From NCBI GenBank assembly GCA_053919585.1, contig CM132803.1: a stretch of 64,000 nucleotides of DNA; one strand, 5' to 3'. This document shows, one piece after another, positions 7,225-64,000 of the stretch (the stretch's first letter is position 1; each line of letters starts with the position of its first letter). Below the pieces are notes generated by a model. It made no database searches. It was not told the DNA's origin and saw only the letters and a program-made list of their open reading frames with translations. This stretch comes from Euprymna scolopes (lineage: Eukaryota). The translations under genes were made by a program, and so were the position numbers.

Positions 7225-8183
7225 ATTATATTAGCATTAAGATGGACTCTTATAAAAATTTGATGTGCATTAAAAATAATACACAGTAACATACAAAAGA
7301 ATGGGAGTTAAATTTTTTTTTTAAAGAAATATTTTTATGGTAGCAAATTTAACTTCAGTTGGGAGCGACTTAAAAACAGTATTAATCATTCAATAGTATG
7401 ATCCTTAACTTTAACTTTGAGAATAATCCTTATTGAAAATTGGTAGGTTGATAGATGATACAGAAAATTAGTATTTCCCTAAAATAATATTCTATTTTTT
7501 ATTTGTATTGACAAGTTGATAACATCTAATGTATGTTAACTGAATTGACATCAATATTAAATTATTTTTAATACACTTAAGAGACATCATCATATTCAGT
7601 TTTGAACCTATAAATGGGTTGACTTATATACATTAGAGGGATTCATAAGAGATGTTCATACTTTTGCATACATATGGAGAAAATGTCATATTCTTTTCAT
7701 ATGTGAAAGTGATTTCAGATACACATTAAAATAATTTTTGTATTAGCTGTAATCTATATAAAAAACAAACAATGCCATGGTAGAGGGAATAACTATAAAA
7801 AAAAGTAAAAATCTATGAATTCAGTACAAAAAATATTGAATTAGAAGTGATTTTAGAACCTGGTAAGCAAACAGTCTGTTTAATGAGTTTCTACTTTCAT
7901 TTCATCAATCGACATATTAGATTTATTATATAAGCATACTGCTTAATCATTTTCTTTATTTTGTCTTTAAGTAATCGCTTGATGCAGAAACTTTTAAAGT
8001 TTTCATTTTCTTTTTAATTTCAGGTAAAGTATTTTGAATCTAACAAAGTTTATTTGTTATATTCAAAAGTGATTATTTTCCTAAGATTCAACATTGGTGA
8101 CTTATTCGATTTACATGTATGATGCGATGTTATGACATGTAACCTAAAATGTGTCCTTTTTTTCAGGAAAAATACAAATAAAA

Positions 8184-11100
8184 ATGACAAAATATAACAC
8201 AAGTGTTTACATGTTGATAATGATGATGCTGTATTTCTTCACATCTGTCATACATTTGATCCATGGTGTAGATCTGAGATACAAAATAGATGAAGGAAAA
8301 AGTCCAGGAACTTACCTTGGTGACATTGCTTCAGACTCTCATATCATGGATGACATTTCTTTGGAAAATAGAAGACTGATCACTTTCAATCAATTATTAC
8401 AAGAAATAACGGGCACTTCACAGTTGTTCCATGTCTCTCGGAAGAAAGGAAAACTTTTCACTTCACAGACATTGGATGCTGAATCCCTTTGTACCTACAA
8501 TACAGAATGTTTCCAAATGGTGGATGTGGCTGTACGACAAGGAAAGACATTCTTGAAGATAATTAAAATTAAAATAATTATAAATGATGTCAATGATAAT
8601 AAACCAGAATTTCCTGAAAAGGAAATTCATTTGGAATTCATGGAAGGTGTAAAAAAAGGATTTAAAAAATCTATTTCGAATGCAAAAGATAAAGACATTA
8701 GTATTTTGAATTCTCAAATCACATATGAACTAAGAGAACAAAATAATCAACCTTTTTCTTTATCAATCCAAAAAACACCTTTTGGTATTCCAAAACTAAG
8801 CATTATCGGTGAGGACACATTAGACAGAGAAGAAAAAGATTCATACATGTTGCAAGTGATTGCAAGAGATGGTGGATCTCCATCAAAAGAAAGTGTTTTA
8901 GATATCCATATTAAAGTAAAAGACTTCAATGATAATGCACCAGTTTTTAGCAAAGATATTTACAATGTTTCAATTAATAACCAAGAATATAGTGATAAGC
9001 CTTTTGTCACAGTTTTAGCAACAGATTTGGATGAAGGAGAAAATGGAAAAGTTTCTTATTATATCAGCACAGAAACATCAGAAGATGTAAAAAATCATTT
9101 CAAAGTAAATGGTTTATCAGGGGAAGTATTTTTGACAAACAAACTGCCCTCAAATCGTAAAAAAGTTTATAAATTATTTATTGGTGCAAAAGATGGTGGT
9201 AAACCTCCACTAAATGGACTCACAGGTATATTAGTAAATGTAATTAATACAGAAAATCGACCACCAAAGATTTTTGTGACTTTCATGTCAGAATCAACGG
9301 ACAAAATTGCAACTATTTTAGAAGACACTGAGATAGGCAGTTTTATTGCTTATGTTAAAGTGACTGACCCTGATGCTGGACAAAATGGACAGGTCAACTG
9401 TGAGTTGCACCATGATAAATTTCGTTTACAGAAATTAAAATCCAAAGAATACAAAGTGACATTGAAACACAAAGTTGACAGAGAAATGCAAGAGCACCAT
9501 GATGTTACAATCAGCTGCAAAGATGAAGGATCTCCTCCACAACACAGTGATAGCAAGTTCTCCATCAAAGTCAAAGATGTCAATGATGTAAGACCACAAT
9601 TTACAAAAGATACATTTAAATTCTCTGTGTTTGAGAATGAAAGTCCAAAGACGTCAGTTGGTTCTATCAATGCCACTGATCCTGATCTGGGAGCTGGCAG
9701 TAGACTCACATATTCTTTGCTTACGAAAAATGAAGACTTCCTACCTTTCAAGATAACCAGTGATGGCTTGATTTCAACAATCATGTCTCTCGACCATGAG
9801 TTCAAAGACATTTATAAATTCAACGTTTTAGTGAAAGATAATGGAAACCCTCCACTTGATAATAGCGTCAATGTCATTGTGCAGATTGAAGATAAAAATG
9901 ATAATGCTCCATATTTTACCTTTCCCAGTGTGAATCCTTTCAATCTCGATGTCAAATATCATCCACATCATACAAAGAACATCACTCTTCTCAAGGCTGC
10001 CGACAGTGACAGTCAAGAGAATGCATTTCTCAAATATGAAATAACTGCAGGCAACGATAAACAGTTGTTTGCCATCAATCATTATACTGGATTGTTGTCT
10101 TTCACTCGCTTACTTGGCCATCAAGATGCTGGCTCCTATCACCTGCAGTTTATGGTCAAGGATAGTGGTAGTCCAGTTTTATCTGCAAAGACATCAGTCT
10201 TTTTGACATTGACAGTTAGTAACAATACCGCAGATATCTTAAATGCTGCCTATACGCACACTGATATCAAGATCCACCAGTATTTACTCATTGTCATTGT
10301 GTTGGTTGCAGTCACCGTTGCTATACCAATTACTGCTGCAATTTCCATCTGCATCCTTCGTTGCATTGATACCAGAAGTGTTGCACAAGCACATCCATTG
10401 GCTGACTCTTCCAGCAAATATTATCCCGAACAGGCACATGCGATGCATCCGTCTTACCAGACTACTTATTGGTCTGGTGTGTCTGTTGCTGTGCGAGCAG
10501 AACAAGATGTGCTTTGTAGAACTCTACCGGGAAGAGGCAGAAGGCCACAACATCGTGCAGATGTCACAAATGATGGACGGAGAAGTTCAGCCCTGGGAAT
10601 TAAAGTCCAGACAGCTACAGAAGTCATCTATGAGGTAGGAATTCATTTTCAATTTTTACTTTTAAATAACTATATCAATCCAACCTTGGCTAAGAACCTT
10701 TACTCTCATTTTTCTTTTGTTACTTTGTAAGAAATATAAATGGAGAATTGTATGTAATAAAAATTGTCATGTAATAAAATTTAATAGACATCTTACAAAA
10801 ACTTAAAAAAAAACAAAAAAACAATGGCTACAGAAGTCATCTTAGAGGTTAGAATTTTTTTTTATTTTTTTTTTCCTTAAAATTTGTATCTCACTAATTA
10901 TTTTAAATTGCTTTTTTTTTTTTTAGAAGTAATAAAGCAATATTTTTTGCTAAGTGCTTGTAGTTAATTTGTATTTAGTAAGAATTCAACTCATTATTAT
11001 GAAACAAAAATGTAAAAATGCTATTTTCAGCTTGGCCAGTGATATGGCAACATTGCATTTAACATCTCTAGCATGTTTATCCATCAGACTGGCTTTTCAT

Positions 11101-12342
11101 TACATTCACCTTTAGGAAGTTTTACGCGTCTGCATTATTAGCTGCATTTTTGTTGAATACAAATAAAATGTTGTGTAAAAAACAAAACAAAAGAAAAAAC
11201 AACTCTTTATTAACTTGTTTTCATCATATTATCAACATGATTGGGATGATGCGGATTGTTCACATTACATTTAAGCTTCTGCTTATCAGTGCAGTCAGGG
11301 AAGCAGGAAACAGGAAGGGAATTCTAAAGTCTAGCAGTCTGAGAGAAGACTTAACAGTGAAGGGGTGGGATTTTGCTGTTGAGTTAGTTGGGAGTATGTA
11401 TGTCTAGAGGGAAAAATTGCTATGAGTTTATCAGAGTACATTTCATGAAAGTACTTGTAAAACAGGAACAGGGATGCAACATTCTCATCTTATAAGCTAT
11501 TTCGCTCTCTTTTGCTCATCAACATAATTTATAATATAAATTATTAAATCTAATACACATACATAAGAGTAAAGTTAAAGAAAATAAGTTCATTTTATTT
11601 CATATGTATTTATATATTTTGCTCCATTGAAAGGAAATCCGAGGTGCAACTGGTGGTAAGAGACATGAAGAGAGAAACCACATGGCTTCTACTTATCATC
11701 CAGACATGGGACCTTCTCCTCAATCAGACCAAGAAGATCCGTATGCTGAAAGATATGCTAATCATTGTCAAAATGTACCTGGTATGTTTTTCATTTTTAT
11801 CAATTAAGCTTTAAAATCCAGTGTAAAAATTAAAGCTTGAATATAATTCACTTTAAAATATTTATATAAAGATTGATTAAATAAACTAATCTCCGTTTTG
11901 GTCATTTCAGCAAACTTAATTTCCTGTATTCATTTCAGCATCTGAAACATCAGATTATTATGAACCACATTCAGCAGAGAATATTCACGAGGAATACACA
12001 GATATGAAACCTTCATTACAAACATTCATGTCTCCTGGGGATACAAGGACTCTTCCAAGACGGATGTATAAGGCAGATGCTGATCCTAACTCGGACTATA
12101 GGCAGTGGGGTAGTCTGAAGAAGAATGCGGCAGATAGATGCACATCTGAAACGCAGTTGCATTTGCACAATGTTGATGCAGACAATGTTACATGTGAGCC
12201 TCAACAAGAACAAACACAATCAGAAGTAGAAACTATACAAGATGACAAAGAAAAAGAGATAGAAAACATTGAGAATAAAGAAAACATTCAACAAGATTCT
12301 CCACCAAACACTCCAACATCAATGCATTCAATACAAACATAA
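8184..12342 (+). CDS. Pcdh: Protocadherin Pcdh-1, join(8184..10634,11634..11781,11939..12342), about 1000 aa
   Basis: Signal peptide, six cadherin repeats (DxNDNxPxF, DxD, LDxE), Pcdh-type C-x5-C in EC1, TM YLLIVIVLVAVTVAIPITAAISICIL. Acceptor tttcag|8167; GT/AG junctions keep frame (phase 0, then 1) and match all paralogs. Confidence 0.93.
11220..11510 (-). mobile_element. LINE 3'-end fragment (CR1/L2-like), same family as 43950-44390
   Basis: ggaagcaggaaacaggaagggaattctaaagtctagcag matches the reverse complement of ~44190-44240. Confidence 0.55.
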
Positions 12343-22675: not shown

Positions 22676-25600
22676 ATGATAAAACACAACACAACTGTAA
22701 ACATGATTATGATGATGCTGTATTTCTTCACATCTGTCATACATTTGATTCAAAGTGAAGACCTGAGATACAATATAAATGAGGGAAAAAGTCCAGGAAC
22801 TTACCTTGGTGACATTGCTTCAGACTCTCATATCATGGATGACATTTCTTTGGAAAATAGAAGACTGATCACTTTCAACCAATTATTACAAGAAATAACA
22901 GGCACTTCACAGTTGTTCCATGTCTCTCGGAAGAAAGGAAAACTTTTCACTTCACAGACATTGGATGCTGAATCTCTTTGTACCTACAATACAGAATGTT
23001 TCCAAATGGTGGATGTGGCTGTACGACAAGGAAAGACATTCTTGAAGATTATTAAAATTAAAATAATTATAAATGATGTCAATGATAATAAACCAGAATT
23101 TCCAGAAAAAGAAATTCATTTGGAATTCATGGAAGGTGTAAAGAAAGGATTTCAAAAATCTATTTCTAATGCAAAAGATAAAGACATTAGTATTTTGAAC
23201 TCCAAGGTTACATATGAATTAAGAGAACAAAATAATCAACCTTTTTCTTTATCAATTCAAAAAACACCTTTCGGAACTCCAAAACTAAGCATTGTGGTTA
23301 AAGAAGAAGTAGACAGAGAAGAAAAAGATTCATACATGTTACAAGTTATTGCTAGAGATGGTGGATCTCCACCAAAAGAAAATGTTCTAGATATTCACAT
23401 TGCAGTGAAAGACTTCAATGATAATGCACCTGTTTTTAGCAAAGATATTTATAATGTTTCCATTAATAACCAAGAATATGGTGATAAGCCTTTTGTTACG
23501 GTTTTAGCAACAGATTTGGACGAAGGTGAAAATGGAAAAGTTTCTTATTATATCAGCACAGAAACTTCAGAAAACATAAAGAGTCATTTTAAAATAAATG
23601 ATTTATCAGGGGAAGTATTTTTAACCAACAAACTGCCTTCAAATCGTAAAAAAGTTTATAAATTATTTATTGGTGCAAAAGATGGTGGCAATCCTCCACT
23701 AAATGGACTTGCAGGTATATTAGTAAATGTAATTAATACAGAAAATCGGCCACCAAAGATTTTTGTAACTTTCATGTCGGAATCGACTGACAAGATCGCA
23801 ACCATTTCAGAAGATACTGAGATTGGCAGTTTTATTGCTTATGTTAAAGTGACTGACCCTGATGCTGGACAAAATGGACAGGTCAACTGTGAGTTGCACC
23901 ATGATAAATTTCGTTTACAGAAATTAAAATCCAAAGAATACAAAGTGACATTGAAACACAAAGTTGACAGAGAAATGCAAGAGCACCATGATGTTACAAT
24001 CAGCTGCAAAGATGAAGGATCTCCTCCACAACACAGTGATAGCAAGTTCTCCATCAAAGTCAAAGATGTCAATGATGTAAGACCACAATTTACAAAAGAT
24101 ACATTTAAATTCTCTGTGTTTGAGAATGAAAGTCCAAAGACGTCAGTTGGTTCTATCAATGCCACTGATCCTGATCTGGGAGCTGGCAGTAGACTCACAT
24201 ATTCTTTGCTTACGAAAAATGAAGACTTCCTACCTTTCAAGATAACCAGTGATGGCTTGATTTCAACAATCATGTCTCTTGACCATGAGTTCAAAGACAT
24301 TTATAAATTCAACGTTTTAGTGAAAGATAATGGAAACCCTCCACTTGATAATAGCGTCAATGTCATTGTGCAGATTGAAGATAAAAATGATAATGCTCCA
24401 TATTTTACCTTTCCCAGTGTGAATCCTTTCAATCTCGATGTCAAATATCATCCACATCATACAAAGAACATCACTCTTCTCAAGGCTGCCGACAGTGACA
24501 GTCAAGAGAATGCATTTCTCAAATATGAAATAACTGCAGGCAACGATAAACAGTTGTTTGCCATCAATCATTATACTGGATTGTTGTCTTTCACTCGCTT
24601 ACTTGGCCATCAAGATGCTGGCTCCTATCACCTGCAGTTTATGGTCAAGGATAGTGGTAGTCCAGTTTTATCTGCAAAGACATCAGTCTTTTTGACATTG
24701 ACAGTTAGTAACAATACCGCAGATATCTTAAATGCTGCCTATACGCACACTGATATCAAGATCCACCAGTATTTACTCATTGTCATTGTGTTGGTTGCAG
24801 TCACCGTTGCTATACCAATTACTGCTGCAATTTCCATCTGCATCCTTCGTTGCATTGATACCAGAAGTGTTGCACAAGCACATCCATTGGCTGACTCTTC
24901 CAGCAAATATTATCCCGAACAGGCACATGCAATGCATCCGTCTTACCAGACTACTTATTGGTCTGGTGTGTCTGTTGCTGTGCGAGCAGAACAAGATGTG
25001 CTTTGTAGAACTCTACCGGGAAGAGGCAGAAGGCCACAACATCGTGCAGATGTTACAAATGATGGACGGAGAAGTTCAGCATTGGGAATCAAAGTGCAGA
25101 CGGCTACTGAGGTCATCTATGAGGTAGGAATTCATTTTCAATTTTCACTTACAAATAATTGTACCTACCCAGCATTGCATTGGATTCTTTTCTCTTGTTC
25201 ATTAAATAAAAGATTTTATACTATAAAAAGTTACTTTTGAAATAACATTTTACAGATAACTTACAAAAACTTGAAATTCCTCTTCAAATATAAAGTAATA
25301 ATTTTTGTTTAAATTTTTTTAAAACCATCTGTATTCACACACATACATGATTGTCTAACTTTGTCACAAATAATGCAATGTCATCTACTTTATATTTATG
25401 CTAATCCTTCTCTTTTTTTATAAAGATTTCTTTATTTTTTCTTAATTTTAGTGTTTGAAAATGTTTTGTGAAGACAGATATGACTAATCTGATTTCATAA
25501 TCAGAGAATGTCCAACTACCTTGTTCATAAACAATTAGTCAATCATGAGTGTGTGTGTATACATACAAATTACTTTCTTTTATAATTTGCTCATTGTCTC

Positions 25601-28418
25601 AAACCACTTAGATTTCCATATTACTAAATGTAAAGATTTATTAGCAAATAAAATGAAACATATTGTAGTATTGCATTTGTATGTACATGAAGAGAGATTA
25701 ATAGATGAATATTATTTTTTATTAGCAAGGAGTGCCGGCGTTGCCCGATCATAAAATATACTTAAATATTATATTTTAACTTATGCGGATCTTATATTTC
25801 TTATTATAGAATCAATTCTCTATTGATTATTACATATTATGTTGTACTCAATATTTTAAAAGTAAAAAACAAAAAATATGACTTATAGCCATCAGCTAGA
25901 ATTGAAACCAAAACTTATAGCACTCCAGCATGAGTTGTTACCACTTGAGCTATCATCAATTAGATAAAATATAGCTAAAAATGAACTAACATTAACGTAT
26001 AAATGTATATATATTTGCACATGCGTGCAATAAAAGTAGACTTATGCATGTCAAGTGCCAATTTCCTTTAGTTTTGATCCTTTAGCAGCTATTTTTACCA
26101 GCTAAAGACCTATAAAAAATGGTTCGTGCAATCATTTGACCCGACTCTTGCCACTTTGTGACCTTTCATCTTGGAAAAGATGCAGGTTGAAAATATGGAG
26201 ACAGACATACAGACAGAGCTAGTGAATTTTATAAATGAGATTTGTCCTGTCAATATAGCCAAAATGCTGCCTCTGTGCATGTAGAAGTTTGTAAATTGGA
26301 CATGTTAATGATGTTTTTCTTATTCTCATGTATCATTTTTTTTTTTTTTTCAATAATTAATTTTACACAAGTTTTTTTAAATTTTTTTTTTTTATTAAAG
26401 TACAAAAACAAGATAAATACAATAAAGTAAACAAAAAGAATTAAAAAACTTACTCAATGAATTAGGATGACATTTTCTATTTACCAATTCTAAAGAATGA
26501 AATGATTTCATTTGATAATTGTTGATTATCCAATGAAAATTAGTGCTGAATCTCTGGAAATGTATGTTACTAAAAGAACTATTGGGCTAATTAGAATATG
26601 AAATCAATGAAATTTATTTGAATTAAGATATTTGTTTTGCACAGACTGGGACTTTCTGTAGTAAGAGTTAACTATTGATTTGACAGATGCAATGATATTG
26701 ATGTTAAATGCCGAAAAATATATTTGCTTAATTTAATATATTGGATTTTTTATTTCATTTATTTTCAGAAATCACTTTCTTTAAAATTAATAAAGCAATA
26801 TTTTTTATTTGTATATTTCTTCTTATATAAAAATCTAAAAAAATTATATATGCTAGCGACACCTATTGGGAATATAAGATCGGCAAGGAGGCAGACAATC
26901 GACTTTCCACACACGAAGAATTTTACGTAAATTGAACACCCACACGTTGACGCTCCTCCAACAAAAATTCGGCAAATGTGTATTTCAGCGGCGTAAATTT
27001 AAGTTTTACACTAGTGGTGGCCATAAAGTGGGTGATCATTATACGTTAAATTATTATAGAAAAGTGATACCCCACTTTCTTTAAACTAACATTTCTTCAT
27101 ATCTTGGAAACTACTCGTTTGCTGGAATTTTAAACGTTATTTTCGTTTTTAACATCCTCAAAAACTTATAAATGTCTTAATTTTCCAAGTTTTTTTTCTA
27201 TAGTGTGTAAAGTCGATTGTCTGCCCCCTTGCCGATCTTATATTCCCAACAGGTGTCGCTAGCAGTATATCATTCAAAAACAAGACAAGATGGTGGGAAG
27301 TTTTTCTTCGATAAAATGTCTATAATATTTGATTTTCTTAAATAAAAACAAACTACTTGATCGATTTACGTGATTTTTGGAATATGACATTTTCATGCAG
27401 TGACAAGTACGTACATTATAAAGATTTTTTTCAGATTTTTATAGTAAAAAAGATTACTAGTGGACCATTTATAGCCTTGCACCATAAATCCTACTATTTT
27501 TTAAAAAGTAGTTAGTTGTGTTTATCAACATGTGTTAGACCAAATAGAGTCAATTAAAATTTTGAATAAAACATTAGTGTTTCATTTCATATCTGTTTGT
27601 GTACTTTGCTCTATTCAAAGGAAATCCGAGGGGCAGCTGGTGGTAAGAGACATGAAGAAAGAAACCACATGGCTTCTACTTATCATCCTGACATGGGACC
27701 TTCCCACTCAGATCAAGAAGATCCGTATGCTGAAAGATATGCTAACCATTGTCCAAATGTACCTGGTAAGTTGAAGATTTCATTTTTTATTAATTAAGCT
27801 TTAAAATTAAATTTTATACTGTGAATATTATTTGCATTAAAAGACGAATATTAAAAGTGATTTCATAAAATTTTATCTTTTCAGGCATTTCAGCATCTGA
27901 AACATCTGATTATTTTGATTATGAAAATTAAAAAGAAAAACATGAATATTTATTATTTTCATATCATAATAGTTAAATGTCTTTTTCAAACATGTTCTCC
28001 TTGATTCATTTCAGCATCTGAAACATCAGATTATTATGAACCACATTCAGCAGAGAATATTCACGAGGAATACACAGATATGAAACCTTCGTTACAAACA
28101 TTCATGTCTCCTGGAGATACAAGGACTCTTCCAAGACGGATGTATAAGGCAGATGCTGACCTTAACTCGGACTATAGGCAGTGGGGTAGTCTGAAGAAGA
28201 ATGCAGCAGATAGATGCACATCTGAAATGCAGTTGCATTTGCACAATGTTGATGCAGACAATGTTACATGTGAGCCTCAACAAGAACAAACACAATCAGA
28301 AGTAGAAACTATACAAGATGACAAAGAAAAAGAGATAGAAAATATTGAGAATAGAGAAAACCTTCAACAAGATTCTCCACCAAACACTCCAACATCAATG
28401 CATTCAATACAAACATAA
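22676..28418 (+). CDS. Pcdh: Protocadherin Pcdh-2, join(22676..25123,27621..27765,28015..28418), about 998 aa
   Basis: Same domain and exon structure as Pcdh-1 and its closest paralog; acceptor tcag|22655; frame-preserving GT/AG junctions. Confidence 0.93.
25722..26241 (-). mobile_element. Helitron-like element with an embedded tRNA-derived segment (25888-25954)
   Basis: Left end ttagc...gccggcgttgcccg (degenerate CTAG plus hairpin); right end gacagacatacagacag...ataaatgaga|t. The minus strand carries A-box TAGCTCAAGTGG and B-box-like GGTTTCAATTC. Confidence 0.55.
26851..27265. mobile_element. MITE with ~60-bp near-perfect terminal inverted repeats in intron 2 of Pcdh-2
   Basis: tgctagcgacacctattgggaatataagatcggcaagg...gcagacaatcgacttt versus aaagtcgattgtctgcc...ccttgccgatcttatattcccaacaggtgtcgctagca; TA-rich flanks. 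Confidence 0.9.
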
Positions 28419-36106: not shown

Positions 36107-39100
36107 ATGCAACATCAGATAATGCCAATAATTGTATGCATATTCCTGCTGGTCTTACAACTTTGCCAAGGTGCAGATCTGACATACAATGTTGATGAAG
36201 GTAAGAGTCCAGGTACTTACCTGGGTGACATTGCAGCTGACTCCCACATCATGGATGATGTCCCTTTGGAAAACAGGCGTTTGATCACTTTCAACCAACT
36301 GCGACAGGAAATGGCAGGCACTTCTCAGTTATTTCATGTCTCCGAGAAGAAAGGAAAACTTTTTACTGCTCAGACTCTGGATGCTGAATCAATGTGTAAA
36401 TGGAATACAGAATGCTTCCAAATGGTGGATGTTGCTGTACGACAAGGAAAGACATTCATGAAGATTATAAAAATTAAAATAATTATAAATGACATTAACG
36501 ATAATGCACCAAAATTTCCAGAGAAACAAATTAACATGCACATCTCTGAAGGCGTCAGAGAAGGTTTCAAAAAAACGGTTCCAGTTGCAAAAGACAAAGA
36601 TGTTAGTGTAATTAATTCGCAGATAACTTATGAACTGAAAAAGACAAAAAATGAACCGTTCTCTTTGTCAATAGATAAAACCCCATTTGGCCCAACACAA
36701 TTAGATTTATTTGTTGATGGTAAACTTGACAGAGAAAAGAAAGATTCGTACATGCTCCAAATAATTGCAAAAGACAATGGATCTATACCTAAACAAAGCA
36801 TTTTAAATATTCATATCATAATAACAGATTTGAATGACAATCCTCCAAGATTTACAAAAAGTATTTATAATGTTTCGATAAAAAATGAAGATTATAAAGA
36901 GAAGGCAATTGTTACTGTGTCCGCTATCGATTTGGATGAAGGAGAAAATGGAAAAGTTTTCTATCATTTTAGTTCACAAACATCAATTGATGACAAAAAC
37001 AAGTTTGAACTTAATGAAAAAACAGGAGAAATATTTTTAAAACAGAAATTACTGTCAGTCCAGAACATTTATAAATTGTATGTAATGGCAACTGACAGTG
37101 GACATTCACCATTAAGTGGATTTGCAGGAGTGTTAGTAAATATTATAAACACTGAAAACAGATCGCCAAATATTTTTGTCACTTTTATGTCTGATTCAAC
37201 AGATAACACAGCTACTATACTTGAAGACATTGAAATTGGTAGTTTTATTGCTTATGTTAAAGTAACTGACCCTGATGCTGGACAAAATGGACAGGTTAAC
37301 TGTGAGTTGCACCATGATAAATTTCGTTTACAAAAACTAAGATCCAAAGAATACAAAGTGACATTGAAACACAAAGTTGACAGAGAAATGCAAGAGCACC
37401 ATGATGTTACAATCAGCTGCAAAGATGAAGGATCTCCTCCACAACACAGTGATAGCAAGTTCTCCATCAAAGTCAAAGATGTCAATGATGTAAGACCACA
37501 ATTTACAAAAGATACATTTAAATTCTCTGTGTTTGAGAATGAAAGTCCAAAGACGTCAGTTGGTTCTATCAATGCCACTGATCCTGATCTGGGAGCTGGC
37601 AGTAGACTCACATATTCTTTGCTTACGAAAAATGAAGACTTCCTACCTTTCAAGATAACCAGTGATGGCTTGATTTCAACAATCATGTCTCTTGACCATG
37701 AGTTCAAAGACATTTATAAATTCAACGTTTTAGTGAAAGATAATGGAAACCCTCCACTTGATAATAGCGTCAATGTCATTGTGCAGATTGAAGATAAAAA
37801 TGATAATGCTCCATATTTTACCTTTCCCAGTGTGAATCCTTTCAATCTCGATGTCAAATATCATCCACATCATACAAAGAACATCACTCTTCTCAAGGCT
37901 GCCGACAGTGACAGTCAAGAGAATGCATTTCTCAAATATGAAATAACTGCAGGCAACGATAAACAGTTGTTTGCCATCAATCATTATACTGGATTGTTGT
38001 CTTTCACTCGCTTACTTGGCCATCAAGATGCTGGCTCCTATCACCTGCAGTTTATGGTCAAGGATAGTGGTAGTCCAGTTTTATCTGCAAAGACATCAGT
38101 CTTTTTGACATTGACAGTTAGTAACAATACCGCAGATATCTTAAATGCTGCCTATACGCACACCGATATCAAGATCCACCAGTATTTACTCATTGTCATT
38201 GTGTTGGTTGCAGTCACCGTTGCTATACCAATTACTGCTGCAATTTCCATCTGCATCCTTCGTTGCATTGATACCAGAAGTGTTGCACAAGCACATCCAT
38301 TGGCTGACTCTTCCAGCAAATATTATCCCGAACAGGCACATGCAATGCATCCGTCTTACCAGACTACTTATTGGTCTGGTGTGTCTGTTGCTGTGCGAGC
38401 AGAACAAGATGTGCTTTGTAGAACTCTACCGGGAAGAGGCAGAAGGCCACAACATCGTGCAGATGTCACAAATGATGGACGGAGAAGTTCAGCCCTGGGA
38501 ATTAAAGTGCAGACGGCTACTGAGGTTATCTATGAGGTAGGTGTCTTTCTAGTTAATTTGAAATAACATTTCATGAGGTAACTACAATTTCCAGACTTTT
38601 TTCATATGAGCACTTTTATTGATAGTACACACATGAAACTCTAGTCTCCTTCGAAGTAATCTCCTCCAGCTGTAATGCACTTGTACTGTTCCAACAATTT
38701 CTGGAAGACCCCACTGAAATTTTCTTGTGTGCGCGTGTCAATGATCCTCGTCACAGCCTTTTTCATCTCCTCAATTGTCTCATAATAACAGCCTCTAAGG
38801 TTTTCTTTGAGCTTAGAGAAGAACCAAAAGTCACAGGGAGTAAAGTTTAAAGTATATGGAGGGCGAGGAACTGTCTTCATGTCCATCTTGGTCAAATAGT
38901 CCGTGATAAGGATGTAGTTGTAGACTATAGATTTGGGACAAACTTCACACAGATCCTCCGCATGATTGTGTGTACAGTTCCTGACACTGACATCAAACTG
39001 TGCACTTAATGTCTCTAGACACATGACGGTCCATATAGATGAAATTCTTTATTTGGCCAATCAACTCTGGTGTTCTGACTTCCTTACTCCTCACACATCT

Positions 39101-40355
39101 CTCATCATGCCTCACAGACTCCCAGCCTTCCTTGAATCTCTTATGCCACTCAAAAACTGATGCTTGATGCATGCAAGATGATCCAAAAGTAGTCTGAAGC
39201 ATTCCATATGAATCTGTGGCATTTTTTTTCCAAGTTAAAAAAAGAATCTTATTGCATATCATTCTTCTCAAATGTCCTCATGTATAGATTAGATTTTTGA
39301 AATCCACTAGCTGTGACAATAAGGCTTTAGTGGAGTGTATTCCAATTCCTGCTGTTACTATTTATTTGAACCTGAAATCATGAAAATAGGTCAGTCATTT
39401 CACAGGATGTATAACAATAGTGTACTGTATTTTCAAGAGTCTACAACAATTTTAAATGCCTGTACAAAAAAGTCTGGAAACTTATTGAAGGCAATTTGTA
39501 AAATTTAATCTGGAAAATTTCTTTTTAACTAACATTTGTGCATTTTTCTTTTTACTGGGATTACTTCAATTCATTTTTATCTTTCGTTGTACTCATGAAA
39601 GGAAATCCGAGGTGCAACTGGTGGCAAGAGACATGAAGACAGAAACTGCATGGGTCCTGCATGTCACCCTGACATGGAACCCTCCTCTCGATCAGACCAA
39701 GATGATCCCTATGCTGAAAGATATGCAAACCACTGTCAAAATGTATCAGGTTAGTTCTTTCTTGTGGCGTACCATGACAATATAAGATAAAGAATTTTTA
39801 AAAAATTTATTTTTGAGAATAAATTTTGCAAAATAAATTAATGGAGGATTATTTTATTTTGCTCATTCTGGTTTTTAATGTGAAGTTGAAATTGAGTCAT
39901 TTATACAACTATTTTATTTTGCATTCATTTCAGCATCTGACACATCTGATTACTATGAACCACACTCATCAGAGAATATTCATGAGGAATACACAGATAT
40001 GAAACCTTCTATGCAAACATTCATGTCTCCTGGAGATACAAGAACTCTTCCAAGACGGATGTATAAGGCAGATGCTGACCCTAACTCTGACTACAGGCAG
40101 TGGGGTAGTCTGAAGAAGACTGCAGTGGATAGATACACTTCTGACACGCAGTTACAACTGAACAATGCAGAGGCAGACAATGTTACATGTGAGCCTCAAC
40201 AAGAACAAGTACAAAGCACATTGGAAGAAGCAGACGAACCAGTAGAAAAAGAGGAAGAAGAAAAAAATGCTACACACACTTTACCCAATGATGTGGATGT
40301 TCAGCAAAATTCCCCTCTCGAAATACCTCACACAATACATTCAACGCAAACTTGA
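36107..40355 (+). CDS. Pcdh: Protocadherin Pcdh-3, join(36107..38536,39602..39749,39934..40355), about 999 aa
   Basis: Signal peptide, 6 EC, TM; acceptor ttcag|36099; frame-preserving junctions. Confidence 0.93.
38572..39500 (-). mobile_element. Internally deleted mariner element in intron 2 of Pcdh-3
   Basis: TIR cores tttccagactttttt / aaaaaagtctggaaa. Transposase N-terminus (ASVFEWHKRFKEG) and C-terminus (PPYTLNFTPCDFWFF...GDYFEGD*, degenerate YSPDLAPCD) are present; the central catalytic region is missing. Confidence 0.9.
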
Positions 40356-42092: not shown

Positions 42093-42160
<68 letters not shown>

Positions 42161-45181: not shown

Positions 45182-48100
45182 ATGAAAATATCAGCATTAA
45201 TATTCTTGTGTTTCATCAAACTGTGCTGCAGTGCTGACCTGACATACAGTGTAGATGAGAGCAAGAGTCCAGGCACCTACCTGGGAGACATTGCTGCTGA
45301 CTCCCACATCATGGATGATGTCCCTTTGGAAAATCGGCGACTAATCACTTTCAACCAACTGCGACAAGGAAATGCAGGCACATTACAGTTGTTTCATGTC
45401 TCCAAGAAAAAAGGCAAACTCTTTACTGCCCAAACTCTCGATGCTGAATCAATGTGTAAGCGTGACATTGAGTGTTTTCAAATGGTTGATGTGGCTGTGA
45501 GGGAAGGAAAAACGTTTATGAAAATTATAAAGATTAAAGTCATAATAAATGATGTCAATGATAATCAACCTGAATTTCCAGAGAAAGAAATTGATTTACA
45601 CTTTTCTGAAGGAGTTAGTAAAGGATTCAAAAAACCCATTCCGAATGCCATTGACAAAGACGTTAGTGCTATTAATTCCAAAATAACTTATGAACTAAAG
45701 AAGAACAAAAATGACCCATTTTCTCTTGTTGTACAAAAGATTCCATTTGGAGCACCAAAACTTAGTATTTCTGTTGAAGAAAAGTTAGACCGTGAAAGTA
45801 AAGATTTTTACTCAATACAAGTTATAAGCAAAGATGGCGGATCACCGGCAAAGCAAAGCGTTTTAAATGTAAACATAATTATTGAAGACATGAATGATAA
45901 TGCACCAATGTTTAGCAAAGACATTTATAACATTTCAATAATGAACAAAGATTATGGAAATGTACCAATCGTAGAATTGACGGCACATGATTTAGACGAT
46001 GGAGAAAATGGAAAAGTTTCATATTATTACCAATCACAAACGTCTGACGAAATCAAAAAGTTTTTTGAGTTGGATAAAGAAACAGGGAAAATATATCTTA
46101 AAGAAAAGTTACCTCAAAATCCAGAATCTGTCTATAAGTTATTTGTTAGTGCAGAAGATGGCGGGGAATCGACACTTAGTGGTTATGCTGGAGTTCTTGT
46201 GAATGTTGTTAACACTCGAAATCGACCACCAAATATATTTGTTACATTCATGTCTGAAGCTACAGATAACACAGCTACAATTTTAGAAGATGTTGAAATT
46301 GGTAGTTTTATTGCTTATGTTAAAGTGACTGACCCTGATGCTGGACAAAATGGACAGGTTAATTGTGAGTTGCACCATGATAAATTTCGTTTACAAAAAC
46401 TAAGATCCAAAGAATACAAAGTGACATTGAAACACAAAGTTGACAGAGAAATGCAAGAGCACCATGATGTTACAATCAGCTGCAAAGATGAAGGATCTCC
46501 TCCACAACACAGTGATAGCAAGTTCTCCATCAAAGTCAAAGATGTCAATGATGTAAGACCACAATTTACAAAAGATACATTTAAATTCTCTGTGTTTGAG
46601 AATGAAAGTCCAAAGACGTCAGTTGGTTCTATCAATGCCACTGATCCTGATCTGGGAGCTGGCAGTAGACTCACATATTCTTTGCTTACGAAAAATGAAG
46701 ACTTCCTACCTTTCAAGATAACCAGTGATGGCTTGATTTCAACAATCATGTCTCTTGACCATGAGTTCAAAGACATTTATAAATTCAACGTTTTAGTGAA
46801 AGATAATGGAAACCCTCCACTTGATAATAGCGTCAATGTCATTGTGCAGATTGAAGATAAAAATGATAATGCTCCATATTTTACCTTTCCCAGTGTGAAT
46901 CCTTTCAATCTCGATGTCAAATATCATCCACATCATACAAAGAACATCACTCTTCTCAAGGCTGCCGACAGTGACAGTCAAGAGAATGCATTTCTCAAAT
47001 ATGAAATAACTGCAGGCAACGATAAACAGTTGTTTGCCATCAATCATTATACTGGATTGTTGTCTTTCACTCGCTTACTTGGCCATCAAGATGCTGGCTC
47101 CTATCACCTGCAGTTTATGGTCAAGGATAGTGGTAGTCCAGTTTTATCTGCAAAGACATCAGTCTTTTTGACATTGACAGTTAGTAACAATACCGCAGAT
47201 ATCTTAAATGCTGCCTATACGCACACTGATATCAAGATCCACCAGTATTTACTCATTGTCATTGTGTTGGTTGCAGTCACCGTTGCTATACCAATTACTG
47301 CTGCAATTTCCATCTGCATCCTTCGTTGCATTGATACCAGAAGTGTTGCACAAGCACATCCATTGGCTGACTCTTCCAGCAAATATTATCCCGAACAGGC
47401 ACATGCAATGCATCCGTCTTACCAGACTACTTATTGGTCTGGTGTGTCTGTTGCTGTGCGAGCAGAACAAGATGTGCTTTGTAGAACTCTACCGGGAAGA
47501 GGCAGAAGGCCACAACATCGTGCAGATGTCACAAATGATGGACGTAGAAGTTCGACTCTTGGAATTAAAGTGCAGACGGCTACTGAGGTCATCTATGAAG
47601 TAAGTATTTAATTTAGTATAATACTGAACAATAATATCACTTTTAGTTTCATTATTCCTTTAAAATTGCATTAGAGTGACATTTTAAAAAATAAATATTC
47701 ATATCCTTTGCATGGAACTATACATGGCCAAAGTGTACTCAATTTTCATATCCATAACAAGTGGAAAGAAAAGAGTGAAATTATTTTCATATTCATAATC
47801 ATTTTATGCCTTGGCAATTTAAGCATAATAAATGATTTTATTATTTATTTTTATACTATAATAAATTTGAATAGATAATTTTTTTTTCTAAGTTATCCTT
47901 CTTATTTCAAATGTTTAACTTATATTTTTATGTTTATAAACCAACTATAAAATCATTATTGAAGTAATTTTTACTATAAAATATTTTTGATACTTTTATT
48001 GAATATTCATTCAGTTTGTTTTGTCATAGTAGTAGTTTTAATAAAATGCATAGATTGTTTCATCTTGTATTAATTATTCAATAAAGGAAATTCGAGGTGC

Positions 48101-49105
48101 AACTGGCGGTAAAAGACATGAAGATAGAAACTGTATGGGTTCTGCATGTCATCCTGACATGGAACCATCTTTTCAAGCGGATGAAGATGATCCCTATGCT
48201 GAAAGATATGCAAATCATTGTCAAAATATCTCAAAACGTAAGCCTCATTACTTTTTAAAAAAAATAAATATTTGACAATTATCAGCTTTTTATAATAAGC
48301 AGAGAAAAGCGTTAAATGAAGAATTTTTACAGAAAATATAGTTAACCAAATGGTGAAAATAAATTTCTTAATAATTTCTTCTTTTGGTGAATTACTAAAT
48401 TCTTTCCTATCCATTGTTAAACTAATTTTTTTTAAAAACTTTTTTTCCCCAATTAATTAAAGATACTAATAGGAAATTATCTGATGCATCAAAGTGAAGT
48501 ATCAGATTTTAGCCTTTTATCTATAAGGAAGTGATGTAAATTATTATACAACAGAATTGAGCATTTAATGACAAGAAAATATACATGTTTACTAACTTGA
48601 AACAATGTATTTTTTAAGTATTTCTTTATACTGCATTGTTGTATAAAGAACTTACATATTATTTATGACTATGTTTACATTTTCTAAAAACGTTTTTACA
48701 GATAATGAAACCTCTGATTACTATGAACCACATTCAACAGAGAATATCCAAGAGGAATACACAGATATGAAACCTTCATTACAAACATTCATGTCTCCTG
48801 GAGATACAAGGACTCTTCCAAGACGGATGTATAAGGCAGATGCTGACCCTGATTATAGACAATGGTCTACCCTTAAGCGGAATGCAGTGGATAGATGTAC
48901 TTCTGACACGCAGTTACAGCTGAACAATGTAGAGGCAGACAATGTTACGTGTGAACCTCAACAAGAACAAACAGTAGTAGAAGAACCAACAGAGAAAGAA
49001 GAACAAGAAGCAATAGAAGAGACACAAAACATTTCTTATTCACAAAATCTTGAACATGATTCTTTACCAGAATCACCAAAATCTAACCATTCCCATCACA
49101 CATGA
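45182..49105 (+). CDS. Pcdh: Protocadherin Pcdh-4, join(45182..47599,48087..48237,48702..49105), about 990 aa
   Basis: Signal peptide, 6 EC, TM; acceptor tttcag|45124; frame-preserving junctions. Confidence 0.92.
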
Positions 49106-53220: not shown

Positions 53221-56200
53221 ATGGGAAACATGATGATACTTTTGTTGTTTTTCTTCAATGTTATACAAATCTGTCAATGCATTGACTTGACATACAATGT
53301 GGATGAAGGGAAAACTCCAGGTACCTACTTAGGGGACATTGCTGCTGACTCCCACATCATGGATGATGTCTCTTTAGAAAACAGACAATTTGTCACTTTT
53401 AATCAGTTGCAACAGGGAGTATCAAGTAATACTCAGTTGTTTCATGTCTCCAAGAAAAAAGGGAAACTCTTCACTGCTCAAACTCTTGATGCAGAATCAA
53501 TGTGTCAACGTGATATTGAGTGTTTTCAAATGGTTGACGTGGCTGTGAGGGAAGGAAAAACATTCATGAAGATCATAAAGATAAAAGTTATAATAAATGA
53601 TGTCAATGATAATCAACCCGAATTTCCGCAGAAAGAAATCGATTTACAAATCCTTGAAGGGATGAGTAAAGGTTTTGAAAAATCCATTCCGAATGCCATT
53701 GATAAAGATATTAGTGCAGTCAATTCAAAAATTACTTATAAATTAGAGAACAATGACAAAGTGCCATTTTCTCTTCTAATTCATAGGCTTCCTTTCAGTA
53801 CACCCAAATTAAGTATTGCTGTGCAAGAAAGATTGGACCGAGAAAATAAAGACTCTTATGTGATACAATTAATTGCCAAAGATGGTGGATCACCCCCAAA
53901 ACAAAATGTTTTAAACATTAACATCTATGTTACAGACGTCAATGATAACCCTCCCATTTTTAGCAAAGATATATATAATGTTTCTATTGAAAATAAAATG
54001 GCAAAAAACATTCCAATAACAAAAGTGACAGCAAATGATTTGGATGAAGGAGAAAATGGAAAAGTTTCATATCAAATAAGTGCAGAAACATCGGAAGATG
54101 TTAAAAATCTCCTTGAATTGAAAGAAATTTCTGGAGAAATATTTCTACGTGAAAACCTGCCATCCAGTGAAAACAGAATATTGAAATTATTAGTCACAGC
54201 TACAGACAATGGTCAACCACCATTAAGTGGTTTTGCTGTGGTGCTGATAAATATGATTAATACTCAGAACAGACCACCAAAAATATTTATTACATTCATG
54301 TCCGAATCTAAAGAAAACACAGTTTCAATTCTGGAAGACGTTGAAATTGGTAGTTTTATTGCTTATGTTAAAGTAACTGACCCTGATGCTGGACAAAATG
54401 GACAGGTTAATTGTGAGTTGCACCATGATAAATTTCGTTTACAAAAACTAAGATCCAAAGAATACAAAGTCACATTGAAACACAAAGTTGACAGAGAAAT
54501 GCAAGAGCACCATGATGTTACAATCAGCTGCAAAGATGAAGGATCTCCTCCACAACACAGTGATAGCAAGTTCTCCATCAAAGTTAAAGATGTCAATGAT
54601 GTAAGACCACAATTTACAAAAGATACATTTAAATTCTCTGTGTTTGAGAATGAAAGTCCAAAGACGTCAGTTGGTTCTATCAATGCCACTGATCCTGATC
54701 TGGGAGCTGGCAGTAGACTCACATATTCTTTGCTTACGAAAAATGAAGACTTCTTACCTTTCAAGATAACCAGTGATGGCTTGATTTCAACAATCATGTC
54801 TCTTGACCATGAGTTCAAAGACATTTATAAATTCAACGTTTTAGTGAAAGATAATGGAAACCCTCCACTTGATAATAGCGTCAATGTCATTGTGCAGATT
54901 GAAGATAAAAATGATAATGCTCCATATTTTACCTTTCCCAGTGTGAATCCTTTCAATCTCGATGTCAAATATCATCCACATCATACAAAGAACATCACTC
55001 TTCTCAAGGCTGCCGACAGTGACAGTCAAGAGAATGCATTTCTCAAATATGAAATAACTGCAGGCAACGATAAACAGTTGTTTGCCATCAATCATTATAC
55101 TGGATTGTTGTCTTTCACTCGCTTACTTGGCCATCAAGATGCTGGCTCCTATCACCTGCAGTTTATGGTCAAGGATAGTGGTAGTCCAGTTTTATCTGCA
55201 AAGACATCAGTCTTTTTGACATTGACAGTTAGTAACAATACCGCAGATATCTTAAATGCTGCCTATACGCACACTGATATCAAGATCCACCAGTATTTAC
55301 TCATTGTCATTGTGTTGGTTGCAGTCACCGTTGCTATACCAATTACTGCTGCAATTTCCATCTGCATCCTTCGTTGCATTGATACCAGAAGTGTTGCACA
55401 AGCACATCCATTGGCTGACTCTTCCAGCAAATATTATCCCGAACAGGCACATGCAATGCATCCGTCTTACCAGACTACTTATTGGTCTGGTGTGTCTGTT
55501 GCTGTGCGAGCAGAACAAGATGTGCTTTGTAGAACTCTACCGGGAAGAGGCAGAAGGCCACAACATCGTGCAGATGTTACAAATGATGGACGTAGAAGTT
55601 CAACTCTTGGAATTAAAGTGCAAACGGCCACCGAGGTCATCTATGAGGTAAGGACTCCTTTATTTTTGTTTTCATTCACAATTAAAAAAGTTATAATTAA
55701 TTAATTGTTCTAAAAAATAAATAAAAGGAAACAGAAATGGAAACATAATAGTTATTCATAAATTTTACAGAAGTTTAGATCAACATGGTACTTTGGGTTT
55801 CAAACTTAGGGAGTTGATCTAGGCAGATAAAAACTGGGTTATTTTGAATTTTTACTATAAACCACCTATTGGCTTTCATGTGGCTGATGAAAGTTAGTGA
55901 GTAGTTTAAAATTAAAGATTTTGCATTAATAGTTATAAAGTTCTGTCCAGAATTTTGATATAGTCCTCAGAATTATCCTGATTGCAATTGTCCAGTCCTT
56001 GAGCTAAAATAATCCTAAAACATTGAGCCGCTTTAATGTTTTAATGTTGGCACTGTATTCTTTGAGAGGAATAGCTCATGTTTCTTGGTTCAAACCTTTT
56101 GCACATATTTGTTGAAAAGATCAATGTGTATAATCACTCAATATTACTTGTTTCCAAAAATCAAGTCTTTCTAATAACATTTTGGGTAAAAATAAACTAA

Positions 56201-63649: not shown

Positions 63650-64000
63650 ATGAACATACAGAATTTGAAGACTACAAAATATTACTCTGGTATTAACAAT
63701 TTTACTATGTTACTAACCATCTACATTTTCATGTTGACTCTTCACTTGGGACAGAGTGTGGACCTGAAATATGGGGTTAATGAAGGTAATAGTCCTGGTA
63801 CCTACCTGGGAGACATTGCAGCTGACTCTCATATCATGAAGGATGTCTCTTTGGAAAACAGGCGATTGATCACATTCAATCAATTGCGACAGGGAAAAGC
63901 TGGAACTTCACAGTTGTTCCATGTCTCCGAAAAGAAAGGGAAACTTTTCACTTCACAGACATTGGATGCTGAATCTCTTTGTACCTACAATACAGAATGT
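63650..64000 (+). CDS. Pcdh: Protocadherin Pcdh-6, 5' partial (signal peptide and most of EC1; runs off the window)
   Basis: Acceptor tttcag|63649; open frame MNIQNLKTTKYYSGINNFTMLLTIYIFMLTLHLGQSVDLKYGVNEGNSPGTYLGDIAADSH...LCTYNTEC. Absent from the ORF track because there is no stop in the window. Confidence 0.92.
   Translation, partial: MNIQNLKTTKYYSGINNFTMLLTIYIFMLTLHLGQSVDLKYGVNEGNSPGTYLGDIAADSHIMKDVSLENRRLITFNQLRQGKAGTSQLFHVSEKKGKLFTSQTLDAESLCTYNTEC

What the first reader, a model, noticed from the sequence alone, without database searches (positions are those of the whole stretch)
9339..10634. A 1296-bp near-identical 'constant region' inside every Pcdh gene (EC4-EC6, TM, proximal tail), fused to variable EC1-EC3
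Seen: 9339-10634, 23828-25123, 37241-38536, 46304-47599 and 54352-55647 are each 1296 bp with no indels. Over 432 codons I see only two variable residues (QKL[K/R]SK and RSS[A/T]LG). The few nucleotide differences cluster in the first ~110 and last ~90 bp, and the core is almost invariant at synonymous sites. Just upstream, EC2-EC3 are heavily diverged; just downstream, intron 2 diverges within ~25 nt. Established: vertebrate clustered Pcdhs use EC1-EC4 (especially EC2-EC3) for homophilic specificity and EC5-EC6 for promiscuous cis-dimers, and they share constant exons by splicing. Inference: this array reaches a variable/constant receptor code convergently, through domain-restricted gene conversion instead of shared exons. 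Cephalopod Pcdh expansions are known, so the literature should be checked for earlier reports of this pattern.
Basis: partly seen in the sequence, partly recalled or inferred. Interest (0 to 1): 0.9.

Follow-up and report, generated by a model that had tools for sequence, protein, structure and literature searches.

The report
Gene-converted constant block in cephalopod protocadherins
Five neighbouring protocadherin (neuronal adhesion) genes of a cephalopod share a 1.3-kb stretch that repeated copying between the genes keeps almost identical while their outer recognition domains stay old and different, the same pattern long known in fish protocadherin clusters but arisen here independently.

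Summary
The five 1296-bp blocks have no indels and differ pairwise at only 10-22 bases, giving two amino-acid differences. The EC1-EC3 coding part just upstream is 60-85% identical, and the intron just downstream cannot be aligned.

The cause is concerted evolution by interlocus gene conversion.
- Synonymous divergence among paralogs is 0.03-0.075 in the block and 1.1-3.1 in EC1-EC3.
- A collinear array from a second species (ENA ERZ21867824) carries the block at dS about 0.31 from the window.
- The block tree splits by species (100/100). The EC1-EC3 tree gives four cross-species pairs at 100% support, and an AU test rejects a species clade (p = 2e-6).
- GC3 is higher in the block, a Sawyer-type run test gives p <= 2e-4, and block differences increase with distance along the array.
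- Contigs from four independent sequencing runs show the block at about 20-25 times the depth of the gene-specific part, so this is not an assembly artefact.

Each gene has its own tail exons 3 and 4, so no constant exons are shared by splicing.

The pattern is not new in kind. Fugu and zebrafish clustered protocadherins show the same >99% identical 3' region of the variable exon, with a boundary in EC4 or EC5. For cephalopods I found only general mentions of gene conversion. An earlier scan note (s1-259181) reports a similar block in another array of this genome. The functional variable/constant "code" remains an inference.

The parts
8184..9338 (+). Gene 1, exon 2, variable part (signal peptide, EC1-EC3, first ~30 residues of EC4)
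   Evidence: ORF 8151-10730; first ATG at 8184; 92% aa identical to gene 2 and 63-65% to genes 3-5
9339..10634 (+). Gene 1 constant block (rest of EC4, EC5, EC6, TM, 92-residue juxtamembrane part); the exon ends at a GT donor
11634..11781 (+). Gene 1 exon 3 (148 bp, cytoplasmic tail)
   Evidence: homology to gene 3 exon 3, AG acceptor and GT donor, reading frame kept
11939..12342 (+). Gene 1 exon 4, coding part up to the stop
22676..23827 (+). Gene 2 variable part of exon 2
   Evidence: recent duplicate of gene 1 (variable-part dS 0.28)
23828..25123 (+). Gene 2 constant block
27621..27765 (+). Gene 2 exon 3 (145 bp)
28015..28418 (+). Gene 2 exon 4 coding part
36107..37240 (+). Gene 3 variable part of exon 2
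   Evidence: Pfam Cadherin_2 plus Cadherin; pairs with s304k of the second species (100/99)
37241..38536 (+). Gene 3 constant block; TM at residues 693-718 of the precursor
   Evidence: contig depth 441-495 against 18-22 for the variable part in run X1
39602..39749 (+). Gene 3 exon 3
   Evidence: a contig of run X5 carries the end of exon 2 directly before 39600; a contig of run X3 leaves at 39749; splice sites read
39934..40355 (+). Gene 3 exon 4 coding part (stop at 40353-40355)
   Evidence: intron 3 has zero depth in the RNA runs while exons 3 and 4 are covered
45182..46303 (+). Gene 4 variable part of exon 2
   Evidence: pairs with s291k (100/99)
46304..47599 (+). Gene 4 constant block
48087..48237 (+). 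Gene 4 exon 3 (151 bp)
48702..49105 (+). Gene 4 exon 4 coding part
53221..54351 (+). Gene 5 variable part of exon 2
   Evidence: pairs with s245k (100/100)
54352..55647 (+). Gene 5 constant block
57028..57172 (+). Gene 5 exon 3 (145 bp)
57305..57708 (+). Gene 5 exon 4 coding part; tail is nearest to genes 1 and 2 (dS 0.16-0.18), unlike its EC1-EC3
63650..64000 (+). Start of a sixth gene of the array (signal peptide and EC1), cut by the window end

Best explanation
The window holds part of a head-to-tail array of complete, multi-exon protocadherin genes of a decapodiform-like cephalopod. Each gene has six EC domains, a TM segment and its own tail exons. Frequent non-reciprocal copying between the paralogs (interlocus gene conversion) keeps overwriting the 3' 1.3 kb of the large exon, from about 30 residues into EC4 through EC6, the TM and the juxtamembrane segment. 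That part therefore evolves in concert within each species. EC1-EC3 escapes conversion and keeps lineages older than the split of the two species compared. Tracts cannot run into intron 2, where homology is lost, so the last ~70 nt of the exon are converted less often. On the 5' side they stop where EC3 is already 60-70% identical, and that boundary sits at the same place in both species. Divergence there blocks heteroduplex extension, and selection for distinct EC2-EC3 probably removes tracts that overrun it. Exchange is most frequent between neighbouring genes. The tail exons, separated by a non-homologous, transposon-filled intron, are homogenised too, but more rarely. Shown here: the concerted evolution, the boundaries, the distance dependence and the gene structure. 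Inferred only: that the outcome is a functional split into a variable recognition part (EC1-EC3, mainly EC2-EC3) and a shared cis-interaction, membrane or signalling part.
For: Block identity and the sharp edges are confirmed. Nei-Gojobori dS among window paralogs is 0.03-0.075 in the block and 1.07-3.1 in EC1-EC3 (0.28 for the recent pair of genes 1 and 2). Between species the block has dS 0.28-0.35, so its synonymous sites are free to change. In ML trees the block splits by species at 100/100, while EC1-EC3 gives g4-s291k, g5-s245k, (g1,g2)-s340k and g3-s304k, each at 100% bootstrap and in collinear order. The AU test rejects a window-species clade for EC1-EC3 (p = 2.35e-6). The longest runs of agreeing polymorphic sites are 74-122 against at most 40 in permutations (p <= 2e-4). 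GC3 is 0.34-0.37 in the block and 0.24-0.30 in EC1-EC3 in all 16 genes. Block differences rise with distance along the array: Spearman rho 0.91 in the window (Mantel p 0.016, close to the smallest value obtainable from the 120 orderings of five genes) and rho 0.59 (p 2e-4) in the second species. Independent read data from four samples and studies show contigs of 500-630 nt identical to the block at 441-495x depth against 18-22x for gene-3-specific sequence. The same kind of synonymous-site drop, with other boundaries, occurs in two further sub-arrays of the second species. A published precedent with the same signature exists in fugu (PMC1852091).
Against: The conversion events themselves are not observed, only their footprint. 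Between the species the block has dS ~0.31, but the four EC1-EC3 'ortholog' pairs have dS ~0.75-1.1 (up to 1.3-1.6 in EC1-EC2 of g5-s245k), which unbiased neutral concerted evolution does not predict. Either those pairs predate the species split, or the block evolves more slowly at synonymous sites. Orthologous non-coding flanks do not align, so neutral divergence could not be calibrated. The run data are assembler contigs that drop rare variants, so the private single-base differences of individual copies could not be confirmed. Only 5 of an estimated 20-25 copies lie in the window. No functional data were examined.
Confidence: 0.87

Rival explanations
1. Assembly or polishing artefact: the copies really differ, and multi-mapped reads made them look alike during consensus polishing or collapse.
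For: Near-identical 1.3-kb repeats are the classic place for such errors. Private variants of single copies (for example C at 38164 in gene 3) are not seen in the contigs of any run.
Against: In four runs from four samples and studies, single contigs of 500-630 nt match the block with 0-1 difference at 20-25 times the depth of gene-3-specific sequence. This requires many truly near-identical copies in the raw data. An independent assembly of a second species shows the same architecture with its own block version. The copies still carry 10-22 differences that are ordered by distance.
Confidence: 0.02
2. Recent whole-gene duplications followed by very fast divergence of the 5' half, through positive selection or local hypermutation, with no conversion.
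For: Genes 1 and 2 are a genuine recent duplicate pair (EC1-EC3 dS 0.28). Non-synonymous change is highest in EC2-EC3.
Against: Synonymous sites of EC1-EC3 are saturated (pS 0.56-0.76), which selection on the protein cannot produce. EC1-EC3 lineages are shared with the second species with 100% support, and a species clade is rejected, so they predate the species split, whereas the block postdates it.
Confidence: 0.02
3. Unequal crossing-over with breakpoints in the block (reciprocal recombination with gain and loss of units) is the homogenising process, rather than short non-reciprocal conversion tracts.
For: Tandem arrays do undergo unequal exchange. The two species differ in the number of genes between the paired ones (s331k, s297k, s265k-s251k have no partner in the window). 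The distance dependence fits either process.
Against: Unequal exchange homogenises whole repeat units. Here the introns, intergenic DNA and EC1-EC3 next to the block are old and gene-specific, and the EC1-EC3 order is collinear between species. The tail exons have a different history from the block 1 kb upstream.
Confidence: 0.07
4. The block is kept identical by purifying selection on the nucleotide sequence itself, such as an embedded RNA structure or regulatory element, without exchange between copies.
For: The block's between-species dS (0.31) is about a third of that of EC1-EC3 pairs. One run shows a cluster of A>G changes in it, and cephalopod transcripts are known (from my own knowledge) to be heavily edited.
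Against: About 70 synonymous differences separate the two species' block versions, yet all copies within a species carry the same version. Independent selection in each copy cannot produce that. Elevated GC3 and the distance dependence point to exchange.
Confidence: 0.02

Closest known systems
Regional gene conversion in teleost clustered protocadherins (fugu Pcdh2 alpha and gamma subclusters, Yu et al. 2007, PMC1852091; zebrafish, Noonan et al. 2004 as cited in PMC4978886)
   Same: The 3' part of the large ectodomain exon is >99% identical in nucleotides among neighbouring paralogs that are told apart by divergent 5' sequence. There is a discrete boundary in EC4 or EC5, low dS inside the homogenised part, raised GC3, lineage-specific homogenisation, and EC1-EC3 keeps the phylogenetic signal. 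Every one of these was reproduced here.
   Different: In fish the units are variable first exons spliced to shared constant exons. Here they are complete genes, each with its own tail exons, which are also weakly homogenised. The cephalopod expansion is independent of the vertebrate one (PMC9068888). GC3 rises only from about 0.26 to 0.35 in a 29% GC window, against above 50% in fugu.
Vertebrate clustered protocadherin loci (alpha, beta, gamma) with variable exons and shared constant exons
   Same: A same-orientation tandem array. Each unit has one large exon coding six EC domains, the TM and the proximal tail. The best solved-structure matches include Pcdh gamma-B4 EC1-6 (6e6b, E = 7e-83). 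EC2-EC3 are the most variable and EC1 is more conserved.
   Different: There are no shared constant exons: exons 3 and 4 follow each gene. The sameness of the C-terminal half of the ectodomain comes from DNA exchange, not from splicing.
Cephalopod protocadherin expansions (Albertin et al. 2015 as cited in PMC6339937; Albertin et al. 2022, PMC9068888)
   Same: Multi-exon genes in head-to-tail sub-arrays. [quoted passage not shown]
   Different: In the papers I could read, conversion is inferred from whole-gene trees. I found no description of a domain-restricted block, its boundary, dS profiles or conflicting EC1-EC3 and EC4-TM trees. The 2015 paper and its supplement were not available to me.

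Membership tests
Protocadherin (cadherin superfamily, six-EC type) | Six extracellular cadherin repeats coded in one large exon | tested here: met
   Pfam Cadherin_2 (26-110) plus Cadherin with 5 stretches, E = 1.8e-76. Residues 27-668 align end to end with EC1-6 structures 6vg1, 6e6b and 6vg4. The 2.4-kb ORFs are uninterrupted.
Protocadherin (cadherin superfamily, six-EC type) | Single transmembrane segment followed by a cytoplasmic tail | tested here: met
   A 26-residue hydrophobic stretch lies at residues 693-718 of gene 3. It is followed by 92 residues in exon 2 and 182-189 residues from exons 3-4. This was read from the sequence; no TM predictor was run.
Vertebrate-type clustered Pcdh locus | Tandem variable exons each spliced to one shared set of constant exons | tested here: not met
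   Each of the five genes has its own exon 3 and exon 4 with AG and GT sites and its own stop. A contig of run X5 joins the end of exon 2 to 39602.
Vertebrate-type clustered Pcdh locus | Head-to-tail array of paralogs in one orientation | tested here: met
   Six genes on the + strand, 8-14.5 kb apart.
Vertebrate-type clustered Pcdh locus | Stochastic, promoter-choice expression with a conserved promoter element and CTCF sites | not tested
   I only noted a conserved 0.3-1.3 kb block 3-7 kb upstream of each gene at 69-83% identity.
Regional gene conversion / concerted evolution of Pcdh paralogs (teleost type) | Near-identity at synonymous sites confined to the 3' part of the ectodomain exon | tested here: met
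   dS is 0.03-0.075 in the block and 1.07-3.1 upstream. In 40-codon windows pS is 0.00-0.07 across the block (0.19 and above in the last ~45 codons) against 0.56-0.76 upstream.
Regional gene conversion / concerted evolution of Pcdh paralogs (teleost type) | The homogenised part clusters by species while the unconverted part keeps orthology | tested here: met
   Block: both species monophyletic at 100/100. EC1-EC3: four cross-species pairs at 100%, AU p = 2.35e-6 against a species clade.
Regional gene conversion / concerted evolution of Pcdh paralogs (teleost type) | Statistical signature of conversion tracts (Sawyer/GENECONV type) | tested here: met
   My own permutation version of the run test gives p <= 2e-4 for all five within-window pairs tested and is not significant for g3-s304k. 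GENECONV and RDP themselves were not run.
Regional gene conversion / concerted evolution of Pcdh paralogs (teleost type) | Raised GC3 in the converted region | tested here: met
   GC3 is 0.34-0.37 against 0.24-0.30 in all 16 genes of both species. The substitution spectrum was not polarised, so GC-biased conversion itself is not shown.
Regional gene conversion / concerted evolution of Pcdh paralogs (teleost type) | Discrete boundary in EC4 or EC5 | tested here: met
   Identity rises from 0.73 to 0.97 within about 16 codons just after the EC3-EC4 linker. In the second species the rise begins about 16 codons further upstream.

The most novel reading that the evidence does not exclude
The conversion boundary at the start of EC4 is an evolutionarily stable, selection-enforced module border shared by at least two cephalopod species and repeated, at other positions, in other sub-arrays. 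Cephalopods would then have arrived independently at the same two-part receptor logic as vertebrates: EC1-EC3 for private recognition, and EC4-TM as a common cis or signalling chassis per sub-array. In addition, the block would evolve about three times more slowly at synonymous sites than EC1-EC3, because GC-biased conversion or RNA-level constraint such as A-to-I editing structures acts on it.
Probability: 0.25. Interest if true: 0.7.

Novelty: new member of a known kind. Interest (0 to 1): 0.5.

Why it matters
The cephalopod protocadherin expansion is the standard example of an invertebrate parallel to the vertebrate neuronal self-recognition system, but how its proteins recognise each other is unknown. 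Conversion spares EC1-EC3 and erases differences from EC4 to the membrane, with the boundary in the same place in two species. Fish arrays, which arose independently, show the same pattern. This argues that specificity lies in EC1-EC3 and that the membrane-proximal half works as a shared module.

It also provides ready-made natural chimeras. Genes 3, 4 and 5 differ only in EC1-EC3 and in the tail, so they can be used directly in binding-specificity assays.

There are three practical consequences:
- Whole-gene trees of cephalopod protocadherins will wrongly suggest recent species-specific expansions.
- Short reads and probes that fall in the block cannot be assigned to a paralog.
- Assemblies of these arrays need long reads.

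Tried and rejected
- **Papers not available.** Noonan et al. 2004 (PMC353213) and Albertin et al. 2015 (PMC id and DOI) are not held. The vertebrate precedent is therefore cited through PMC1852091 and PMC4978886, and the 2015 statement through PMC6339937.
- **Literature searches.** Four completed searches for a domain-level report in cephalopods found none.
- **Neutral divergence from flanks.** I tried to calibrate it from orthologous non-coding flanks. The upstream 1.5 kb does not align at all, and downstream only the exon 3-4 region aligns at 72-83%.
- **Read check.** All runs offered are stored as assembler contigs, so copy-specific single-base variants and long-read spanning could not be checked. 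Depth ratios and contig identity were used instead.
- **Positive selection in EC2-EC3.** I looked for dN/dS above 1 in recent duplicates. Counts are too small and ratios are below 1 (g1-g2 EC2: dN 0.059, dS 0.40), so nothing is claimed.
- **Pfam on the tail exons** gave no family.
- **Rejected explanations.** These were a shared constant exon (the block is in frame within each gene's own exon), whole-gene recent duplication, and nucleotide-level selection alone (see rivals).
- **Not attempted.** Structure prediction and fold searches, because they would not discriminate between the explanations.
Full report
**Observation**

They differ from each other at 10-22 positions. The differences lie in the first ~120 and last ~70 bases, plus five private singletons in the 1.1-kb core. 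The protein differs only at K/R and A/T. Each stretch is the 3' part of one uninterrupted 2.4-kb reading frame.

In 60-base windows, mean pairwise identity is 0.60-0.85 over the upstream coding part and 0.96-1.00 inside the block. It is 0.885 at 10570-10629, 0.32 in the next window, which begins at the last five bases of the exon, and lower still beyond it. A sixth gene begins near 63650-63707 and runs off the window.

**What the genes are**

Pfam finds Cadherin_2 plus five Cadherin stretches. Residues 27-668 of gene 3 align over the whole length of solved six-domain protocadherin ectodomains: 6vg1, gamma-B4 6e6b and Pcdh10 6vg4. Fragment structures place EC3 at about 245-348 and EC4 at about 349-462. 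The block starts at residue 379, so it begins about 30 residues inside EC4. It runs through EC5, EC6, the membrane segment (693-718) and 92 juxtamembrane residues.

The large exon ends at a GT donor. In gene 3, exon 3 is 39602-39749 and exon 4 is 39934-40355. A contig of run X5 carries the end of exon 2 directly before exon 3. Intron 3 has no depth in the RNA runs while both exons do. All five genes have their own exons 3 and 4 with canonical splice sites and intact frames. Nothing is shared by splicing.

The nearest named proteins are from the cuttlefish Acanthosepion pharaonis at 57-58% identity. The window is therefore probably from a decapodiform cephalopod, but I did not identify the species.

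**A second species**

The protein search returned 12 full-length and 2 partial proteins from one ENA assembly (ERZ21867824): 10 full-length ones on a 397-kb contig and the rest on two short contigs. Their block is 93.3-94.7% identical to the window's and 97.5-100% identical among themselves. Their EC1-EC3 parts are 62-80% identical to the window genes. I fetched four loci holding 11 distinct genes.

**Tests of the mechanism**

1. *Synonymous divergence.* Among window paralogs dS is 0.03-0.075 in the block. In EC1-EC3 it is 1.07-3.1, or 0.28 for the young pair of genes 1 and 2. Within the second species the block has 0.03-0.11, and between species 0.28-0.35. In 40-codon windows the raw synonymous difference falls from 0.56-0.76 to 0.00-0.07 at the boundary. 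It rises again only in the last ~45 codons.
2. *Trees.* The block splits the two species at 100/100. EC1-EC3 gives four cross-species pairs with 100% bootstrap: g4-s291k, g5-s245k, (g1,g2)-s340k and g3-s304k. They lie in the same order along both arrays. An AU test rejects a window-species clade (p = 2.35e-6).
3. *Run test.* A permutation version of Sawyer's test gives p <= 2e-4 for every within-window pair tested.
4. *GC3.* It is 0.34-0.37 in the block and 0.24-0.30 upstream in all 16 genes. The fugu study used the same sign.
5. *Distance.* Block differences grow with distance in the array. Adjacent genes differ at 10-11 sites and the outermost pair at 22. Spearman rho is 0.91 in the window and 0.59 (p 2e-4) in the second species.
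6. *Boundary position.* The 5' boundary lies just after the EC3-EC4 linker in both species, beginning about 16 codons further upstream in the second one.

Together these show concerted evolution by exchange between paralogs after the species split, restricted to the 3' part of the exon.

**Artefact check**

I laid contigs of four runs from four samples and studies on gene 3. The gene-specific part has depth 18-22 in X1, while the block is covered by contigs of 125-633 bases with 0-1 difference at depth 441-495. The ratios are similar in X3 and X12 and higher in X5. Many truly near-identical copies therefore exist in raw data, roughly 20-25 if X1 is genomic DNA.

The second species' assembly shows the same architecture independently. 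Contigs drop rare variants, so the private variants of single copies remain unconfirmed.

**Beyond the block**

- The tail exons also cluster by species (100/99), but with within-species branches of 0.1-0.16.
- Their history differs from both other parts. The tail of gene 5 is nearest to genes 1 and 2 (dS 0.16-0.18), although its EC1-EC3 is the most distant from them.
- Homogenisation therefore acts on everything 3' of EC3. It is very frequent in the exon-2 block and rarer across the non-homologous intron 2, which holds a high-copy mariner-type remnant in gene 3.
- Two other sub-arrays of the second species show the same synonymous-site drop, with boundaries further 3'.

**Open point**

Between species the block has dS about 0.31. 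The EC1-EC3 pairs have dS 0.75-1.1 in most domains, and up to 1.3-1.6 in EC1-EC2 of g5-s245k. Neutral concerted evolution predicts equal rates.

Either those pairs are older than the species split, or the block changes more slowly at synonymous sites. Slower change could come from GC-biased conversion against the common GC>AT mutations, or from RNA-level constraint. Flanks could not be aligned to calibrate this.

**Comparison with what is known**

The fugu paper describes exactly this pattern. The 3' regions of variable exons are >99% identical among neighbouring paralogs with divergent 5' parts. There is a discrete boundary in EC4 or EC5, raised GC3, and EC1-EC3 is used for phylogeny because EC4-EC6 is homogenised (PMC1852091). 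The Xenopus paper summarises the same for zebrafish, mammals, shark and lizard, with EC2-EC3 spared (PMC4978886).

[quoted passage not shown] I found no domain-level analysis in the library.

**Verdict**

This is a real and clean case of a known evolutionary process in a lineage where the gene family expanded independently. It is new at the level of detail: the boundary, the rate contrast, the distance dependence and the weaker tail homogenisation. It is not new in kind. The functional reading as a variable/constant receptor code is plausible by analogy and untested.

Noticed in passing
window 38276, 38279, 38290 (also 37229): Run X5 alone has its dominant block contig (depth 896) carrying A>G at three sites within 15 nt just after the TM segment. 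The changes would be R724G, S725G and a silent Q728. The likely DNA run X1 and the runs X3 and X12 show A. This could be clustered A-to-I editing or a polymorphism of that animal.
   Followed up: partly
window 38641-39271 (- strand), intron 2 of gene 3: A remnant of a mariner/Mos1-type transposase (Pfam HTH_48, E = 9e-6) sits in sequence with contig depth up to 70,000-114,000 in all runs. It is a very high-copy transposon family, and it accounts for much of the size of intron 2 here.
   Followed up: partly
window 11634-12342, 27621-28418, 57028-57708: The tail exons 3-4 of gene 5 are nearest to those of genes 1 and 2 (dS 0.16-0.18), although gene 5 has the most distant EC1-EC3 from them (dS 2.8-3.1). 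This suggests a separate, long-range exchange of the tail module.
   Followed up: yes
window 769-2153, 14900-15875, 30092-31392, 41978-42367, 49670-50100, 59220-59717: One conserved non-coding block (69-83% identical, not homogenised) lies 3-7 kb upstream of each of the six genes. It may be a promoter or 5' exon, and earlier scan note s1-244856 says the same. The block before gene 4 contains a (CA)n run near 42040-42160.
   Followed up: no
alignment of window genes with L001-L004: Between the two species the block's synonymous divergence (about 0.31) is roughly a third of that of the collinear EC1-EC3 pairs (about 0.75-1.1, higher in parts of g5-s245k). Simple neutral concerted evolution does not explain this.
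   Followed up: partly
window 61782-62457: There is a tandem, self-similar stretch with a period of about 150 bp at 70-75% identity between copies, in the spacer before the sixth gene.
   Followed up: no
L005 (contig ctg119318l) and L006 (contig ctg118819l) of ERZ21867824: Other protocadherin sub-arrays of the second species have their own homogenised 3' parts. They start later, at about alignment codon 460 and about codon 540, and their edges are less sharp.
   Followed up: partly
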